Position numbers and translations under genes: made by a program
Shown: one piece after another, positions 14,901 through 33,718 of the stretch
Layout of the letters: the number at the start of each line of letters is the position of its first letter
How positions within the stretch are numbered: position 1 is the stretch's first letter
DNA from: Podarcis pityusensis
Taxonomy: Eukaryota
Assembly (NCBI GenBank): GCA_964106645.2
Contig: OZ067038.1
Reading direction: 5' to 3' (one strand)
Length of the DNA: 64,000 nucleotides
The notes under the pieces: generated by a model
What the model was told of the DNA's origin: nothing
The model's database searches: none
What the model saw: the letters and a program-made list of their open reading frames with translations, nothing else

Positions 14901-16460
14901 GTTGCCTCATGAAATCAGGCAGTGGTCTTTCCCAAGAGTGCTGGGCCCTGGGCATGCCAGTTCTTTTTATACTGAAAGCCAAAATGTAGGTTGTGTCTGT
15001 TGTTGTTAATAATGGATGTGTCCATTATTAAAAACCCACTCCAGGTTTTCTCCCAAGTCCCCAACCCCCAATTTCAGAAGCCTAATTTAGATTCCCTTCC
15101 ACCAGTTATATTTAGTGTTGCTATTGTTAAAGCAATTAGGAGTATTGCATTAGTCTTGCCATTCTGCTGCCATTTGCCTGGAGATCTTCTAGTTGATCTG
15201 AAATTACCTTCTGCATGCGCTGGAATTTCTGCAGCATTTGATTATCAGCCAGTTGATAAACATATGTATGAAATGGCAGCACCATCTTGTGCATTAAATG
15301 TAGGTCTGCAGTTAAAAGAGTTACAACCAGAGATAAGCCACTGTGTTACAAGAAGCACTAAAAAGCAAAGTGTGTGAATCACGTGACTCTGTTATTTTTG
15401 GCACTTTTGTGACATGTGAAACTAGCCAGATTGACTGTTGAAGACCTCAGTATGTAGCTTAGCTTGCTCATGCTAAATTGTCTTCAACACTTCAGAAAAC
15501 TAGATCTTTTCTGCTAGGCAGGGGCAGCATGACAAGAGTTTCGCACAATATTTTGACTGGGACATTTTTTGAATGGTCAAGTAGCACAACACAATTGAAA
15601 ACCAACCTACTGCTCTGATATTGCACCTAGAAATGAGACGTATTCCAGCTAATTTAGGTTTCTTAGTATGTTTGGTTGAAAGCCTGACACCAAGTAAACA
15701 TCTGAGAAAGGAGATGGAAGAGAAGAAAATCTTGACGTAACCAATCCAGATGGTACAACCCCCAAGTGTGGCATATGATGTTAAAGAAAAATAAAAGCCG
15801 CAATGTAACTTGTAGGAGAATATGGATTCCCAGACCAGCATAATTTTTATTCTTGTGACATTTGTGGTTATTTCACAGGAATGCTGTGACTCCAAAAAGA
15901 ATTGGACCCTGATTTCTTTTGGTTTGTATCTCAGCCATATTTAGGATGCAGAAATGTCTTTGTGACGCTGAACCAAGGTCACTTATAAAGAATGGGTTTA
16001 ATATATCGGGAAGCCTGTTTTTAGGAATCAGTAAAGCTGGCTTGGGTATCTTCTTTCTCTGTAGGCAGACAGGTACTGCTGCCACGAGTAATGCTGCTGT
16101 CTCTCCTGGCTCCTCAGCACTTTTTTTTTTGTAGTATGTAAACTCCCTCCTTGTCCTCCAGAAGGTTGCACAGACTCTAATTATGTATGCATGACCTATC
16201 TTATGCATATTAATTGTGTTACGCTTCTCCTCTGCAGAAGGGAGACCTGCCCACGACTGAAGTGTAACTAATGATGCGAACCCTTCTTTTGGAAGTGTGT
16301 GATTGTTTCTCCGTCCTCCCATGTGTGGACAACCCTCCTAGACCTCTTTCCCCTCTAGCTCTGTGTGTGTTTTGTATTTAGTTTTTGCTAACCTGGTTCC
16401 TGTCTCTGGTTTTTTGGGTGTTGCTGTCTGTGCCGTCGCCATGTGTTCGCTTGCATGCAG

Positions 16461-16589
16461 TTGCGGAAAGGTCCTCCCGTGCCGCCACCTCCAAAACTCA
16501 CTCCGTCCAAGGAGATGAAGCAGGAGAACATCATCAACCTGTTTGATGACAATTTTGTCCCAGAGATCAGTGTGACAACCCCCTCACAG
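16461..16589 (+). CDS. BIN1: BIN1 exon 13 (12A, CLAP), [43 protein letters not shown]
   Basis: Acceptor atgcag, donor CAG|gttagc, 129 nt, phase 0-0. It carries an RxxPxxP SH3 ligand and the FxDxF AP-2 motif (FDDNF). Confidence 0.97.
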
Positions 16590-17855
16590 GTTAGCTTCTC
16601 CTTCTTCCCTGCCCTCCCTTGTCCCTTCCTCTATCCGCTTCACCTTCACCTAATATTTTTTTTTGGTCCTTTCCTTATTAGAGGTGTCAGGCCATGAAAA
16701 CTGCTCAGTGCATGAATGTATGGGGGGGCCAATGTGATTTGAAATGGGCAAAAGGGCCAGTGAGTTTTCCCACCATATCTTATCGGCTCAGAAACTGTGT
16801 CTGAGGTAAATGGAGGCAGAATACGTGGAGAGGTTCCATCATTTTCCAATGTCTTTCATCAAGGCCATGGAGATCAAACCTATTTCTCCCCAGCTAAATA
16901 GGAGAGTGAGGCAGGAAGGCATTATTGTTTCAGGACATTGGGTACCCACCCACCCACCCACTCATGTGAAGTGGTCCCAGTTCTGCAGCCAAGTGGAGGA
17001 AATGTGGTTTGGATCAAGGGCATCCATCCCCATCCTTTAGAACAAAATTTCCTCCTGAGGCCCACATTCCTTTCTGGGGAGCTTTTTGGGGGGCCTGGGC
17101 AAAAGTGGGTGGAGAACAGAATCTAGGGTAAAGTTTAGAAGCTCTGCCCACATTATTTTTCTTAGAGTGAGGAGGAATTGGATGGGGTCTGGATGGGGCC
17201 CCCTTGATAATTGGGTACTAGCATGGTCACCCTGGCTCATACCTTACTTCCCCTCACATGGCTGGGGCATTAAGAATTGTGAGATTCTTAAATATATGAA
17301 TGTGGACTGTGCCTCACAGTGGTAACTTGAAATACCTGTGTGGTTTTAGCTGCCTCCAAGAAAAAAGTGCTTTTTTTCCTTATTGATAAGAATTTGAGAG
17401 ACAAATGGGTTTTGTGTTAGTGACTTTGGATGCTTTCATGCATCAACCCTAGACAGGTCATTCTTGGCCCTGGGCCTGCACTTAATATTTTTTAAAGTCA
17501 CTAGCATCTGCCACCTCTTCAGAGTCTCATGGCCTCTCAAGCTACTATTGTAAAGCTTGAGAAACTGATTGAAAACAAAATATTCTGTTGTAGCTAATTG
17601 CCTGAGGTAGTGACTAGGCAAATGGATGATATCCACCACATTGTCCCTTCCCAGGGATGATTTAATTCTAGCCCTTGTGAGGGAAGAAGGAAAAAACCAG
17701 CCTGATCAGTTTTCTGGCCACAATCTTACAACTTGCATCATCATCATCATCATCAACAACAACATTGTGATGTATAATTTTTTTCCATTATTCATAAAAA
17801 AATGACACCTCTAGCAGTTCTGTTTCCTGATTCCGCTCTTCCTTCCCTACCTCAG

Positions 17856-17909
17856 CGCGGTGGCCTGCGGCTTTTACCTCTTCCTCCTGTTCGACGGCCG
17901 AAACATTGC
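17856..17909 (+). CDS. Candidate additional BIN1 cassette exon, RGGLRLLPLPPVRRPKHC
   Basis: Branch-like cctgat, long pyrimidine tract and cag acceptor; donor TGC|gtgagg. It is 54 nt, phase 0-0 and open, with six CpGs in a CpG-poor intron. No transcript evidence is available. Confidence 0.6.
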
Positions 17910-20900
17910 GTGAGGGGCCTGGAGTTGGGAGAAAAGGCAAGTGTAGGCCACAAGTTACAAGGGTTGTGGGATTACCTCACAGTTGTGGGGATACAGGTCA
18001 TAGTTCTACAACAGATTAGGATTCCTTATTGAGGGTGGGGAGCAAAGGAAGATATTAAGCTGCCACTTAGCTAGCTTTAAACCTGATTTTTTTTAAAATA
18101 AATAAATAAATAAAAAGTAGGTCTTTGTCATTGCCAGAAACATTTATTGGAATGTTCTGAAACAAATTAACACAGAAATGAGCACCAAGTGTGGATTTCT
18201 GTCTGGCCATTTAGTAGCAACCATACATATATGGGCCAGTTCAAGTAGAACAGGGTGTGGAGCTCTTTGGAAGTGATGGGAGTTGGAGTCCAAAAACATC
18301 TGAAGGGCTTCTGGTTCCTCACCCCTGCAAGGGTGGAAACAAAAAGCAACAGATTGCAACATCTCTCTCCATCAGGACTTGATTTTAGAAGGTAAGGGGA
18401 ATGTTTATGTGTGGAAATCTCTTGAGAGATGACCAAAGGGAAGGTTCAGAAGTAAAGGAACTACAAGGGAAAAAAGAGGACCCTGTAGGGGAAAAAAAAG
18501 GCTTGTAGTACAAAATAAAAGAGGTTGTTGGGAGTAGTGTGTGGGAGTAGTGATTTGTTTACATTTGAGAGAGAGAAATAAATGAGCCTGTCTAGGAGAT
18601 CTTAGACTAAGGGACTTTTGGAAGAATGCCTGTGGAAAAACACCTGTAGAAAAATGTTATGTGAAAATGCAAAATCAATGATGAGCACAAGGTAGAATTA
18701 GTCTCACCCTGAGGTACTGCGAGATTATTGTTTCATGTGGCAGATTCTGAACAGCATTAGAGGCTATCCAAATTGTTCTTAATTTAGTATAATTTTAATG
18801 AGGTGGGAGAATGGAATTTGAAGCAGAAAATTCTTAAATGCGCTGCTAGCCATGCAAAAAGGATTTCACCACCTGTTAGTGGCACTTTTCTTTCTTTCTC
18901 AAAATCCTGATATGTAGGCGGTGTGGTTTTAAAGAGGTTAATTGTTAGTAACATGCAATTGGCCGAATTTATAGCTTCAGTGAAACGTACCAACAAGCAT
19001 TGCCTTTTCTTTTTGATTTTTCTTCCTAAAGATGAGAGCTCAGAGATAACAGTGGATACCATGGGGAGCTAGGAAGGAGAGCAGAGGCTTTGCATTAATG
19101 GGGAAGCAGAGACTAAAAGTGAGAAGAGTTGCACTTTGTAGAGTCTTTTGGTCAAGGGAACCAAGGAGCTGCCTTCAGTGTAGGAATTCTGTCTGTATAT
19201 GCCCCGTTCATTTTGTTATCTGAGAAAGCCGTGGGCCACTGAGCAACCTCCCATCCTTGTCCACACCTATCTTTTCCTTGTAGCATGCCTCAACAACTCT
19301 TACACCATGTTTTATATCATACGTTTCTGTGTAAAAACACTTGCCTAAACAGAGCATTCAGCTTGGGACGCATCCAGCATGGAGGACACCTGGCATGTAC
19401 AGGTTTCAAATGGATGGGTTTGAGTCCTAGAACAGAAACCATAGGGAAAAACCTATGATCAATGTATTTCATGTACCATATGTGATTTTTTTCTGTGTGT
19501 GTTGGGCTAATTATTTGGGAGGAGAGGGAGGGCAAGCTAACAAGAAAGAGGAACCCTCGGCACATGGTGCAGGTAACTCTGGGGTGACAGGTAAGCTTCT
19601 AGCATGGCTATACCCTTTTGACCTGAATTGGTTTTTAGTCAGGCACAGAAAATGAATACCTAGAAGGTCTTGCTTCAGTGGTAACCTACATAAGAAATAC
19701 TTAGGTGATCTGCTGTGAGTATTGTGTAACCTTTTAAAATCTAAATTTATTGGAGTTGAGATTATGAGACAGAAAACCGCCTTCATTGAAAGCTTGTTCT
19801 GATATTGGTAGGAACTAGTGAATGACACAAAAAAGTTAAAGTTGAAATATAAATTGCTGCTGCTTGGAAACTGTGTGGAAAAGAATGTGCTAGAAGTTTC
19901 TCTCTTGAAAGTATGTGGATATATCAAACTGATAAAGGGTTTTGCTTTGAAACAGCAGCAATATAGTTTTCCTCAGTTGGTGCATTTACGTTAGTTTTCA
20001 CCAGATATCCTAATAATTCAGAAATGTTTACTGCTGTGCCTTGGTTTGGTTTAGAAAGGTTACATTGCATTACTTTGCCTTAGGACCAGAAGAACTATCA
20101 GAGAAGTTGCTGAAATATTTGGACAGAGCTCCTTTCAGAAACAGCAAGCTGGGAAAAAAGGGGTGCCTTGTAAATCATCTTTTTAGGAATATGGACATTA
20201 GTCAAAATTTGAATGCTGCCACTGATGTTCTAATTTGCAACCCCAATAGAATTGCTTCTAGTTAATAAGATAACCTCCTGACTAAAAAGGGACCTTTTGG
20301 CTAGATATATAACTTGAAATGTATATAATAGAGAACTGGAATAATTTATTAATATTGGAAATAACGTCCGAATATGGAAAGCATTAGAATATGGGCAGGG
20401 GAAACAGATTGCAAAAGCTAAGATCTTAAACAAGGAATCTACTGTGTTTCTGACTATGATGATACAGATTTGCTGCTGTGAGGATCATAGAGAGGCTTCC
20501 ACTGAAAATGCTGTGCACATCATACATAGTTTCATTCTTTTAAGAAGTGCCTAAAGCAGTGGCCTAGCTGTGCTGAAAGTTGCATGTGGAAGTATCTTGG
20601 GTAGGATTTAGGGACCCTGTTTGGAAAGATCACAAGTGATAGTGACCTCAAGAAGACCCCTGATAAATATGATGGATGGTAACATGAAAACTGCTCAGGC
20701 TCTGTAGAATACTGATGCTTTGTTTTCACGGCTGCGTTTCTGCAAAAGTGTTGAGCGTACTGTGGCCACTGGGCACATGTGAGCAGTCATTGCTTGTACC
20801 ATAGAGTTGTATGCATCTTTTTTTGCACCTTCAGCTCCTGGGTAACACCTTCTGCATACCAGCCTGCATCCTATACCTGACTAACACGCAATACTGCTTT

Positions 20901-20919: not shown

Positions 20920-21030
20920 TTTGATGCCCCTGGGCCCTTCCAGGAGGGAGCCAGCCTGTTGGATTTTGATTTTGATCCCATTAAACCTGATAACAGCCCT
21001 GTAGGGAAGTCGCCTACGCCTGCTGCCCAG
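20920..21030 (+). CDS. BIN1: BIN1 exon 14 (CLAP), [37 protein letters not shown]
   Basis: Branch point ctgactaac, acceptor gcaag, donor CAG|gttggt, 111 nt, phase 0-0. Contains the clathrin box LLDFD. Confidence 0.93.
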
Positions 21031-22374: not shown

Positions 22375-24106
22375 GTAAGATTTCTATTAATATAGCTTTC
22401 AGTGCAATAAATTCTACCATGTGGTGCTTGGCATGTGTGAGTACTTCCTTCTGTCACTATCATGCAAAGATGATTATTCTTGTCTTGACCTTCCGTTCTC
22501 ATCCTCTTCAGTGCTATGAACTAAAGTGGTGTGGTACAGTTGCAACCTCTTCTGCCCTTTGTCTGTCACGCTGAGAAGAAGTCTTCATCCCCTGTGCTTT
22601 GATATTGCCTATTATTAATGGCATTGACTGAAGCACAAACCTTCTTGCTGCAATAATTGTAGACCTTGCTGCTACTTTTTACCTTGTCAAAAAACAAACA
22701 AACCCCTGCATGCCATTTCCTACCTCTCGATTGTGTAGTATGTATACTTCTCAACTACCACCAAACAATTCCTTATTCTATACATATATTTAGTATAATG
22801 CTGTGCTTGCTGATTTGCTGCCGTGGTTCACTAATAACAGAGATTGGAGATCTCTCCAGTACTGCTGGAGAAACGAACCTTTCCTCCTTTCTTATTATGC
22901 TGCCAGATATTACGCTGTAATAAATCAGTTTAAAAAGCCAATGGCTTGTAGTTTCCAGACTTTCTTCATAACATTTTGGGCATGTTGAGATATATAGCTT
23001 TGCTTGAGTCCACCTGCTAGCAAGTAACCTTTATTCTTTGCTTTTGTGCATTTCCTGTTGTCTTTATTAATTCTATATCTTCACAGGAGGATACTTCTTA
23101 TGTTCTAAGTTAAAATTTAAGTTTACTCATTTGGCTTACGTTATCTGCCATCAGATGTCTTTTGAGGTGTGATTGGCCTTTAAACAGAATTGGCCTACAC
23201 TGGTTTCCCATTGTAAATTCATCAAATTGTCTCAAGAAGTTGACTCCCTTGTCTTTCCTGACCCAAGAACCTTCACTATTACTTCTTCCTAAGCATTTTC
23301 TCTGCTGTTTTCCCTCCTCCCTTTCCTCCTCATATAAAGGTTTAGTGAATAGATTGTGTCCTCAGGATAGGTAGCCATTAGATTTAGATCAACCACCCCA
23401 GAAAAATGGTGCGCTGGGGAAACAAGCACCATATTTCTTCAAACAAATGTGTATGAATCCCCCCGCCTTCCATTATTTTCCTTGCTATTTTTCCTCATTG
23501 AAAATATATATTATCACACAGCAGGGTTTAACTGCACCAAAACATATAGCAGTCCAGTGAGTAAAGAATTGCTAGCTCAACCACCAAATTATCTGATTTA
23601 AATCTAAACATCATTGAGTACTGCATTACCAAAACTTCAGTGTAGGGAAGTGCAAGTTGACTCATTTCATTCTGTATAAAAGCAACACAGAGAAGCTAGA
23701 TAGCCCCCCAAATAAAGAAGTATGACAAGTCTCACCTTAGTTAAAATTTCTCAACAGAAGTTCTGGCTACTGATTCAGTAGCTTGCCACCCTAGTTAAAA
23801 AGCTTACTAAGCCTGACAGAAGGCATTGTTGTTCAAAATGTATTGTCAATAAAGCCAACTATTAAAGGCAGGAAGTGAGAAAAAGAATTGTAAGCTACTT
23901 GTGTGGGGTACTGTGGCCTGGCACCTTTCTGTGCAGTTGAGAGGAGCCCGATCAGATGAGAGATTGCAGTGGACTACCCATGTAGCTGTGCCTCAGCAAC
24001 TGTGGTTGTTGAATGGAAAGCCAGTATGCTGTGGCCTCTCTTACACAGTCATAGTGTATGTACAACTACTCCAGAAAAATGGTGCAATGTGGAAACAAGC
24101 ACCATA

Positions 24107-24485
24107 CAGTGGTGCCCCGCAAGACGAATGCCTCGCAAGACGGAAAACCCGCTAGACGAAAGGGTTTTCCGTTTTGGAGGTGCTTCGCAAAACAAATTTC
24201 CTATGTGCTTGCTTCGCAAGACGAAAATGTCTTGCGAGTTCCTGCGGGGTTTTTTTCCTCCCCCCCCTTTTTCCCAAGCCGCTAAACCGCTTATCAGCTG
24301 ATCGTTAAGCCGCTTAACAGCTGATCGCTAAGGCGCTTATCAGCTGATCCGCTAAGCCCGCTAAGCCGCTAATACTGTAGCGCTAATCCGCTAAACCGCT
24401 AATGGGCTTGCTTCGCAAGACGAAAAAACCCGCAAGATGAAGAGACTCGCGGAACGGATTCTTTTCGTCTTGCGAGGCACCACTG
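24107..24485. mobile_element. Tigger/mariner-like MITE, relatively young
   Basis: TIRs cagtggtgccccgcaagacg / cgtcttgcgaggcaccactg with TA TSD. CpGs are retained and there are internal ccgctaa repeats. An empty-site paralog lies at 23390-23451. Confidence 0.9.
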
Positions 24486-25070
24486 TATTTCTTCAAACAA
24501 ATGTGATCTATATTTTCCCAGCTTTAGTTGTGATATAGGATGTTAAATACCTACCCTAAAGTAGATAGAGACTATGAACCACCAATGTTTTGCTTCTCTC
24601 TGAACTGCAACCTTTAACCTAAGATATCTTCTGCTGCTATTTGCTCTGCTTGCTTTTGTAATATCCTTATGTCATGCTGACGGCGTGCTTCTATAGTTAT
24701 TGCTGAAACCATTATTGGCTGAACAATTCATTAATTTCCGATTCAGAATATAGATGTTTTTAAGTGGAACAGTTCTCCATGAAAGGTCATTTAATCCATG
24801 CTGATATTATCACTGTATGTAGTTTGCTTCTTGTCAGGAACTACCTTTAAGTCTATTTAGCAGTGTTTCGTTGCTAGTTAAGCATTTACCTAAAAGCAAA
24901 TACATTTAGTGGTCGTTCCTTCTTTAAAACCCTGCTCCCACCCTCTGCCAGCAATGGCTATTCTTTAATATATATTTTTAAGGACATAATCACCTCCCCC
25001 CCAGGTTCCATCCAAAATTATGGCACATTTGACTCTTACCTGTTCAACAGTTCTATTTACCCTGGGATTA

Positions 25071-25426: not shown

Positions 25427-25546
25427 CCGGAAAAGACTCCATCTAGCAGCGTTCAATCTATGGATCAGTTTCCGGCCGATAATCCTAGCAATAGTGCGTT
25501 CGAGGTGGACTGGCCTGACCAGCCCACTGAGACTAAGATCAGCCAA
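25427..25546 (+). CDS. BIN1: BIN1 exon 16, copy a, PEKTPSSSVQSMDQFPADNPSNSAFEVDWPDQPTETKISQ
   Basis: Acceptor catcag, donor CAA|gtaagt, 120 nt, phase 0-0. Its position and AFEVDWP resemble human exon 16 (TFAVSWP). Whether this copy is spliced is unknown. Confidence 0.75.
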
Positions 25547-27183: not shown

Positions 27184-29166
27184 AAGTCTTTCTAGCAGTG
27201 TTTTGTTGCTAGTTAAGCATTTGCCTTCGTTAAATATTCTCAAAGCCATTGAGAGAGGGTATTCTGTAGATCCAGCTCTATGTTTTGTACAACAGCAAAA
27301 CAAGCTACCCTGGATGGGGTTGCGTAACCCACCCACAGCAAAAGACAATTCAATGAGACCTCGATGAGCATTGTGTTGAGGGTGTGTATAGGGAATGAAT
27401 ATTCAAATGCACACCTGCACCAGTTGTTCACACAGAAGTTTACTCTACAAGTTGATTTCCCATGCTATTTCCTCCTGAAGAGAGTCAGGGGTTGTGGATT
27501 GTGATACATATTGTGACATCAAAGACCCATATACTGGTGGGATGGGAAAGCCATTTTAGAATCAAACAGCCTGATATAAATGTAACTGATGCAGATATGG
27601 GCTGCCATAACTCAGAGAATCTGCTTTGCATGCAGAAGGTCTCAGTTTTCAATTCCCAGCATCTCCAGCTAGAGCAGGAAGAGACTGCTGTCTGAAACCC
27701 AGTCAGGGTAGACAATGGTGAGCTAGATGGCTTTCTATATTCTGATATTTTCCCCAGAAGGTGTTTGATCCAAAGACACAAAGAAGAGATAGGGGTTTTA
27801 ATCTTTATAATACGACTTTTGCAACAAAATAAGCTATACAGTTGAGAGTCCAAATAAAAGGACATGAATATTTTATGACATAAAATAAATTACCCCAAAT
27901 GTTATAAAATAAGATAAACCAAAATATCAGATAAGCTTGTTAAGTCCATACTCAAATTCACCTCACAGTTTCAGGCTTTAATTTAGCTCACTATAGATCA
28001 TATATCTATATCTATATACAGTATCTACATATCTGTCTGTATATATTTATATATACTGGTAGATATATATAGATATAGATATACATATTCTGTGACTGGA
28101 AAACCACAGCTTAAAAACAAATACATTTAGTGGTCTTTCCTTCTTTAAACCCTTGCTCCCACCCTCTGCCAGCAATGGTTATTCCTTTTATATATATTTT
28201 TAAAGGACATAATCACTTCCTTCTGTGTTATGGAATTAAATCTACTGAGAGGCTAAATTCAGTGACAAAATTCAAAATGTGGCCCCATTCCCATCTTCTG
28301 CAGCAGAGAAGGTGTCACTGAGACAGCTCAGCACTGCCTTTATGGATTTGGCAGTGCATAGAAGCAGTGAGGGAGAAAGCAAGAGGTACTTAATGATGTA
28401 GGAGGGATTTTTAGAAATATCCAGGGATGCCTTGACAAGGCTAAACCAGGACAGCATCCTCTGGAGAACGGTGCTGCCTGATGCTTGACACTGGCAGTCT
28501 TCCAGGGCAGTTCTACTTGCACTGCCTGTATCCATGGAAGCTCCATCTGCACCCTAACAATCCACTTCATCTCAAGGTGAACTACCCTGGTCAATAAATG
28601 GAGGCACTTTTGTCAGACCATTGGCTGCAGGGGTAATGTTGACCCCACTTTCCCCCCAGGATCCATCCAAAATTATGGCGCATTTGACTCTTACCTGTTC
28701 AGCAGTTCTATTTACCCTGGGATTATTTCATTGTCTACTCTGTCTTACTTCTCACTGCACTCTTCTCATTTTTGTATCTTCATGTAACCATGCCTACGAC
28801 TATCTCCTCCCATCTCTGTTTCTCTCTCCTCCCTCCTTCAAATTCCACCCATCAGCCGGAAAAGACTCCATCTAGCAGCGGTCAATCTATGGATCAGTTT
28901 CCGGCCGATAATCCTAGCAATAGTGCGTTCGAGGTGGACTGGCCTGACCAGCCCACTGAGACTAAGATCAGCCAAGTAAGTGAAAGTATTTGAAGTGATC
29001 ATACATTTGAAATTGTCTTGTTCTGGCTGGTGTGCTCTAGCACAAGCCTGACTCAGTTGTTATTCTTTGGAATGCATTAGGCTGGGGCAAATTTATGACC
29101 TCTTGCACCTAGCACTCTTCCAAAGGAATTAGAATTTACCCATTCCCTAGGCACGATAGTAAAGCA
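27184..29166 (+). repeat. Tandem segmental duplication, copy B (contains exon 16b)
   Basis: Homologous to 24849-25737. It carries ~885-nt and ~430-nt segments absent from copy A and lacks the MITE. Confidence 0.93.
28856..28975 (+). CDS. BIN1: BIN1 exon 16, copy b, PEKTPSSSGQSMDQFPADNPSNSAFEVDWPDQPTETKISQ
   Basis: Acceptor catcag, donor CAA|gtaagt, 120 nt, phase 0-0. It differs from copy a by one base (gtt/ggt, V/G). Confidence 0.8.
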
Positions 29167-33616: not shown

Positions 33617-33718
33617 CCCACAGAAGCCGCTCCTGCTGGTGCTGAGGCAGCTGGCAAAGAAGCAGCAGCAGCTGGAGCTGAAGCAGCTAAAACCGAAACT
33701 GACTCAGGATCTGCCTCA
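33617..33718 (+). CDS. BIN1: BIN1 exon 17 (MYC-binding region, alternative), PTEAAPAGAEAAGKEAAAAGAEAAKTETDSGSAS
   Basis: Acceptor ttgcag, donor TCA|gtaaga, 102 nt, phase 0-0. Ala/Glu-rich like human exon 17. Confidence 0.88.

What the first reader, a model, noticed from the sequence alone, without database searches (positions are those of the whole stretch)
17856..17909. Candidate new BIN1 cassette exon encoding a second SH3 ligand (RGGLRLLPLPPVRRPKHC)
Seen: a branch-like cctgat at about -26, the tract ttccgctcttccttccctacctcag, 18 open codons in the phase 0-0 needed between exons 13 and 14, and donor gtgagg. There are six CpGs in 54 nt amid CpG-depleted intron, and (CAT)6 YCAY repeats ~100 nt upstream. 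The peptide contains PLPPVR (PxxPxR) followed by RPK. Known: BIN1 SH3 binds basic Pro-rich ligands (dynamin PxRPxR, MYC, tau), exon 13 binds it intramolecularly, and YCAY clusters bind NOVA. The human exon series I recall has no such exon. Inference: this may be a non-mammalian exon adding an extra SH3 latch or partner site.
Basis: partly seen in the sequence, partly recalled or inferred. Interest (0 to 1): 0.8.

Follow-up and report, generated by a model that had tools for sequence, protein, structure and literature searches.

The report
Lizard-specific extra BIN1 exon, boundary corrected
Lizards carry an extra 81-base exon in the membrane-shaping gene BIN1; automated annotations already contain it but I found no study of it, and it adds a short proline-rich piece that may bind the protein's own SH3 domain.

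Summary
The exon is real, but it is 81 nt (17856-17936, 27 codons), not 54 nt. It ends at a non-canonical GC donor (AAG|GCAAGT). The window is BIN1 of a Podarcis-type lacertid.

The 27-residue exon is already in 36 RefSeq predicted isoforms from 10 lizard species (geckos, a cordylid, lacertids, an amphisbaenian). It always follows exon 13 and joins exon 17 in all ten species; it joins exon 14 only in Lacerta agilis. An 11-residue core holding overlapping class I and class II SH3 motifs is invariant. The YCAY cluster upstream is conserved in three lizards, a position that predicts skipping where NOVA is expressed.

Turtle and ostrich keep alignable DNA there without the splice sites or the frame, so birth from ordinary intron sequence is the likelier origin. 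SH3 binding and tissue pattern are inferred, not shown. I found no paper on this exon, and the scan had not noted it on other DNA.

The parts
17856..17936 (+). Cassette exon, 81 nt, 27 codons, phase 0-0; codons 4-14 form the invariant core with overlapping class I and class II SH3 motifs; net charge +5
   Evidence: Translation identical to the insert in RefSeq models of Podarcis raffonei, P. muralis, Lacerta agilis and Zootoca; conservation line; motifs
17826..17855 (+). Branch point (A at 17830), pyrimidine tract and AG acceptor
   Evidence: 48 of the 55 upstream bases invariant in Podarcis, Gekko and Lerista
17934..17942 (+). GC-type 5' splice site AAG|GCAAGT; intron starts at 17937
   Evidence: Invariant in three lizard genomes; matches the exon end in 36 RefSeq models
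17910..17915 (+).
   Evidence: AC in Gekko and Lerista; no retrieved model ends here
17718..17795 (+). YCAY cluster, including the CAT repeat; candidate NOVA silencer
   Evidence: 8, 10 and 10 YCAY in the 160 nt upstream in Podarcis, Gekko and Lerista; 1 in turtle, 4 in ostrich; about 1% of background windows reach 8
17699..17718 (+). 20-nt intronic element shared by lizards, turtle and birds; positional anchor for orthology
16461..16589 (+). BIN1 exon 13, the upstream splice partner in every model that holds the new exon
   Evidence: Matches PDB 1MV3 BIN1 at E 2.6e-18
20920..21030 (+). BIN1 exon 14; joined to the new exon only in Lacerta agilis models
33617..33718 (+). BIN1 exon 17; a downstream partner of the new exon in all ten species

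Best explanation
A regulated, lizard-lineage cassette exon of BIN1. Shown: a strong acceptor and a GC donor define 81 nt that splice in frame after exon 13, most often straight to exon 17, in predicted isoforms of ten lizard species; the core peptide is under purifying selection. Inferred: (1) the upstream YCAY cluster lets NOVA silence the weak-donor exon in neurons, so it appears mainly in non-neuronal, probably muscle or heart, isoforms of the 11+13+new+17 kind; (2) its basic proline-rich core binds BIN1's own acidic SH3 domain as a class II ligand, adding a second latch beside the exon-13 site and competing with dynamin-type partners; (3) it arose from ordinary intron DNA on the line to lizards. 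My odds: exon real at 81 nt 0.95; non-neuronal bias 0.65; gain rather than loss elsewhere 0.7; own-SH3 latch as the main role 0.45.
For: 36 RefSeq models in 10 species carry the exon with the same two ends. Podarcis versus Gekko: 4 synonymous and 3 non-synonymous base changes in the exon, against 0 and 8 in the next 48 in-frame bases, where Lerista also has a stop. Codons 4-14 invariant in all 8 peptide variants. BIN1 SH3 prefers class II motifs (PMC11245310) and binds its own CLAP region in a closed state (PMC6246682). An upstream YCAY cluster drives NOVA2-dependent skipping (PMC8358048). The exon joins exon 17 in all 10 species and exon 14 in one; Rhineura has it in 10 of 14 models, none with exon 14. 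Turtle DNA aligns (score 94, shuffle maximum 35) but lacks both sites.
Against: No binding data; only 176 of 448 motif-matching peptides bound BIN1 SH3 in PMC11245310. Podarcis versus Lerista shows 1 synonymous and 6 non-synonymous changes, all outside the core. The exon is absent from the retrieved models of Euleptes, Sphaerodactylus and Salvator. Lacerta agilis joins it to exon 14 in 8 models. Snakes, iguanians, anguimorphs, tuatara and crocodilians were not tested.
Confidence: 0.5

Rival explanations
1. Same exon, but its motif recruits other SH3 proteins in trans (Src-family kinases through the class I reading; endophilin, SNX9, cortactin or similar through the class II reading) rather than closing BIN1.
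For: The invariant core also matches class I, with R-x-L-P-x-x-P spacing, while BIN1 SH3 prefers class II. The class I arginine is as conserved as the class II one.
Against: Exon 13 itself has only class I matches, and from my own knowledge that site binds BIN1 SH3 in cis, so a class I match does not point away from BIN1. A ligand in the same chain has a proximity advantage.
Confidence: 0.25
2. The peptide acts as a basic, partly hydrophobic patch that binds anionic lipid, like the exon-11 phosphoinositide motif, or as a localisation signal; the PxxP match is incidental.
For: Net charge +5; arginines kept despite CpG-rich codons; co-occurs with exon 11 in most models.
Against: The proline spacing is fully invariant, while the basic positions after the core partly vary.
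Confidence: 0.12
3. A low-inclusion exon kept mainly by DNA- or RNA-level constraint (splicing control of the 13-16 block), with little protein function.
For: Upstream intron is as conserved as the exon (48/55 versus 70/81 invariant); one model only in several species; absent from models of three species.
Against: Frame and length kept in 12 species; changes in the core are synonymous; present in 10 of 14 Rhineura models.
Confidence: 0.1
4. An alternative last exon that reads through to a stop and makes an SH3-less BIN1, as in the Gekko kuhli GenBank model KAL8183105.1.
For: P0001 reads through the GC site; AATAAA repeats lie near 18100 in the window.
Against: Stop position differs between species, with a stop in Lerista 8 codons after the GC site; changes after the site are mostly non-synonymous; the AATAAA run is not in Gekko; G. 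japonicus RefSeq splices at the GC site.
Confidence: 0.03

Closest known systems
RefSeq predicted lizard BIN1 isoforms, e.g. XP_053258780.1 (Podarcis raffonei X13), XP_077790698.1 (P. muralis X13), XP_033017527.1 (Lacerta agilis X1), XP_054826180.1 (Eublepharis X1), XP_061465184.1 (Rhineura X1)
   Same: They contain this exon; the lacertid peptide is identical to the window's 27 codons.
   Different: Automated predictions; I found no paper describing the exon, its GC donor, its origin or its function.
BIN1 exon 13 / CLAP intramolecular SH3 latch (PMC6246682; PDB 1MV3)
   Same: Alternatively spliced proline-rich segment in the disordered linker that can occupy the C-terminal SH3.
   Different: Exon 13 is found across many vertebrates and has class I matches only; the new exon adds a class II match, is more basic and was found only in lizards. 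Binding is shown for CLAP, not for this exon.
Cardiac cBIN1 (BIN1+13+17) and muscle exon-11 isoforms (PMC9527923, PMC5570487)
   Same: The commonest models skip exons 14-16 and use 13 and 17, often with 11.
   Different: An extra 27 residues between 13 and 17; reptile hearts mostly lack T-tubules (PMC9527923), so skeletal muscle is the likelier setting. Tissue not tested.
NOVA-silenced exons with upstream YCAY clusters (UNC5B exon 8, PMC8358048)
   Same: More than 3 YCAY within 45 nt upstream of a cassette exon, conserved.
   Different: No CLIP or knock-down evidence here; part of the cluster is a simple CAT repeat in two of three species.
GC-AG alternative introns (PMC3167603)
   Same: GC donor with otherwise full consensus, on an alternative exon.
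   Different: Nothing unusual as a class: about 1 in 20 alternative human introns.

Membership tests
Coding cassette exon with GC-AG intron | Conserved branch point, pyrimidine tract and AG | tested here: met
Coding cassette exon with GC-AG intron | GC donor with strong remaining consensus, conserved | tested here: met
   AAG|GCAAGT in three genomes
Coding cassette exon with GC-AG intron | Frame-preserving; included and skipped forms both exist | tested here: met
   81 nt; both forms among RefSeq predicted models
Coding cassette exon with GC-AG intron | Spliced reads across both junctions | not testable with these tools
BIN1 SH3 ligand | Class II motif P..P.[RK] in a basic context, conserved | tested here: met
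   definition from PMC11245310
BIN1 SH3 ligand | Measured binding or solved complex | not testable with these tools
   Needs ITC, NMR or holdup assay
NOVA-silenced exon | More than 3 YCAY within 45 nt upstream, conserved | tested here: met
   6, 8 and 8 sites within 45 nt in Podarcis, Gekko and Lerista; definition
NOVA-silenced exon | NOVA binding and lower inclusion in neurons | not testable with these tools
   Only indirect: rare junction to exon 14
Exon born from intron DNA | Orthologous non-exonic DNA in outgroups | tested here: met
   Turtle and ostrich align at the same place, lack the AG and GC, and have 10 nt of gaps
Exon born from intron DNA | Direction is gain, not loss in turtles and birds | tested here: inconclusive
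   Tree shrew intron 13 does not align; tuatara and crocodilians not fetched; parsimony favours one gain
Transposon-derived exon | Match to a repeat family | tested here: inconclusive
   No self-match in the 64-kb window and single-copy orthologue in turtle and bird; no repeat library on hand

The most novel reading that the evidence does not exclude
A protein-coding exon born from non-repeat intron DNA on the lizard stem, which gained an AG, a GC donor, a NOVA silencer and a two-way SH3 ligand, and now sets BIN1 autoinhibition or partner choice in lizard muscle isoforms that skip the neuronal clathrin exons.
Probability: 0.25. Interest if true: 0.62.

Novelty: new variant of a known kind. Interest (0 to 1): 0.4.

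Why it matters
BIN1 splicing controls membrane tubulation, dynamin binding and muscle triads, and its SH3 is gated by a spliced-in internal ligand. A lizard-restricted exon with an invariant SH3-type motif is a natural experiment on that gate. The alignable, splice-site-less DNA in turtle and bird also makes it a clean case for studying how a coding exon arises. The caveat is that the exon already sits in automated annotations and no function is shown.

Tried and rejected
As a precaution I sent no window letters of that stretch to DNA-pattern, genome, homology, paper or findings searches afterwards; protein searches used exons 10, 12, 13 and 14 only.

Possible human records: P0024, P0014 and P0019 look human or primate. 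They were printed once with the other hits and not compared, saved or searched further.

Other dead ends: Pfam found nothing on the three pieces. Complex prediction of SH3 with the exon peptide gave no verdict (0.04 against a mark of 0.34) and is not evidence either way. The first word search returned only mammals, selected for the 13-14 junction, so it says little about absence in mammals. Contig look-ups failed for Sphaerodactylus and Varanus. The Chelydra intron is mostly N and was left unfilled.

Rejected readings: the 54-nt exon with GT donor; the terminal-exon reading; and the CAT run as a mere microsatellite, since Gekko keeps 10 YCAY without a pure repeat.

Full report
Setting. The window holds the 3' part of BIN1. 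Exon 13 (16461-16589) matches BIN1 in PDB 1MV3 at E 2.6e-18, and exons 9 to 20 were located by translation. Exon 12, exon 14 and the two exon-16 copies match Podarcis raffonei models residue for residue, and P. lilfordi shares the copy-2 variant. The organism is therefore a Podarcis-type lacertid lizard.

Observation. The CpG density is reached by 0.12% of windows. The acceptor is the best in intron 13 by a crude matrix, but the proposed donor is weak.

Finding the true end. The best hit to exon 13 among cluster representatives was a Gekko kuhli gene model that joins exon 13 to this same acceptor. That predicted an 81-nt exon with a GC-AG intron. The prediction was written down before RefSeq isoforms were retrieved. 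A search with gecko exon 12 then returned lizard isoforms. Thirty-six models from ten species carry exactly 27 residues: Podarcis raffonei, P. muralis, Lacerta agilis, Zootoca, Rhineura, Hemicordylus, Eublepharis, Paroedura, Heteronotia and Gekko japonicus. The skink Lerista has the exon and donor intact in its genome. From my own knowledge, RefSeq alternative models with a GC donor normally rest on transcript alignments, but I could not view those reads. GC donors are enriched in alternative introns and have a stronger remaining consensus (PMC3167603).

Selection. Podarcis versus Gekko shows 4 synonymous and 3 non-synonymous base changes in the exon, against 0 and 8 in the next 48 bases; Gekko versus Lerista shows 5 and 3 against 2 and 10. 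Podarcis versus Lerista is less clean (1 and 6), with the amino-acid changes outside the core. Across 8 peptide variants, codons 4-14, codon 16 and codons 20-27 are invariant. The core holds a class II match (PLPPVR) and an overlapping class I match (RLLPLPP).

Splicing pattern. The exon always follows exon 13. It joins exon 17 in all ten species, exon 16 in three and exon 14 only in L. agilis. In four geckos the model has exon 11, lacks exon 7 and skips exons 14-16, which resembles mammalian muscle and cardiac isoforms. Rhineura has the exon in 10 of 14 models, none with exon 14. Long-range combinations in predicted models are weak evidence; adjacent junctions are better. The 160 nt upstream hold 8-10 YCAY in three lizards, against 1 in turtle and 4 in ostrich, and about 1% of background windows reach 8. 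Upstream clusters are linked to NOVA-driven skipping (PMC8358048). The likelier reading is exclusion from neurons, not neuronal inclusion. This is inference.

Origin. Green turtle intron 13 aligns over the whole segment (score 94, shuffle maximum 35). Ostrich aligns to turtle there (56 against a maximum of 39), although directly against the window it stays within the shuffle range (34 against 41). Both lie just downstream of a shared 20-nt anchor. Both lack the AG and the GC donor, and the turtle stretch is 71 nt with frame-breaking gaps. Turtle has another AG a few bases downstream with an open 66-nt frame, but no GT or GC where the lizard donor lies. Tree shrew intron 13 does not align. No repeat match was seen within the window. 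One gain on the lizard or lepidosaur stem is simpler than a gain plus a loss in turtles and birds, but the direction is not proven, and snakes, iguanians, anguimorphs, tuatara and crocodilians were not tested. The exon was not in retrieved models of Euleptes, Sphaerodactylus or Salvator; that may reflect tissue sampling, unseen isoforms or loss.

Mechanism. BIN1 SH3 prefers class II motifs (PMC11245310) and is known to close onto its own CLAP region (PMC6246682). A basic class II motif placed next to exon 13 would most simply add a second internal ligand in isoforms that lack exons 14-16, lowering access for dynamin-type partners. The same paper shows that only 176 of 448 motif-matching peptides bound, so the motif alone gives modest odds; conservation raises them. 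Recruitment of other SH3 proteins is the main rival.

Known versus new. The exon is in public automated annotation, so its existence is not new. A full-text search showed no paper joining BIN1 with lizards among the 12 listed, and a review of BIN1 exon evolution treats exons 11, 13 and 17 in the passages read. What this work adds is the corrected boundary, the GC donor, the restriction to lizards with alignable non-exonic DNA in outgroups, and a testable NOVA-silencing and SH3-latch model. Verdict: real, a new variant of a known kind, interest 0.4.

Limits and rules followed. Three hits that look human or primate were not pursued. N stretches in fetched loci were left unfilled.

Noticed in passing
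window 16160-16300 (AG...GT segment 16238-16261): Highly conserved block upstream of exon 13 with TGCATG and ACTAAT motifs and a 24-nt AG-GT segment, open in three lizards. It is 23 nt in turtle and one bird and 25 nt in ostrich, and is in none of the retrieved proteins. More likely a splicing-control element or a non-coding or poison microexon than a conserved coding microexon.
   Followed up: partly
window 25427-25546 and 28856-28975: Two intact copies of exon 16 (443-nt duplication, 96.6% identical). Both are used in tandem in RefSeq models of Podarcis, Lacerta and Zootoca, single in other lizards, so the duplication is lacertid-wide and already annotated.
   Followed up: partly
window 17699-17718: 20-nt intronic element conserved in lizards, turtle and birds, older than the exon; function unknown.
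   Followed up: partly
window 16668-16708: Short conserved intronic block about 90 nt after exon 13, shared with turtle and birds; overlaps an AG at 16681.
   Followed up: no
window 19132-19707: About 500-nt stretch of intron 13 alignable with gecko and skink at 68-70%, with short matches in turtle; no exon assigned.
   Followed up: no
window 24098-24502: CpG-rich stretch with a 23-nt tandem repeat, probably a repeat-element fragment.
   Followed up: no
L001:23161-23301 (Gekko kuhli, KAL8183105.1): The GenBank model reads through the GC donor to a stop and truncates BIN1; probably an annotation error from missing the GC site.
   Followed up: yes
Rhineura floridana models: None of 14 retrieved models has exon 14; either tissue sampling or loss of the clathrin-binding exons.
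   Followed up: no
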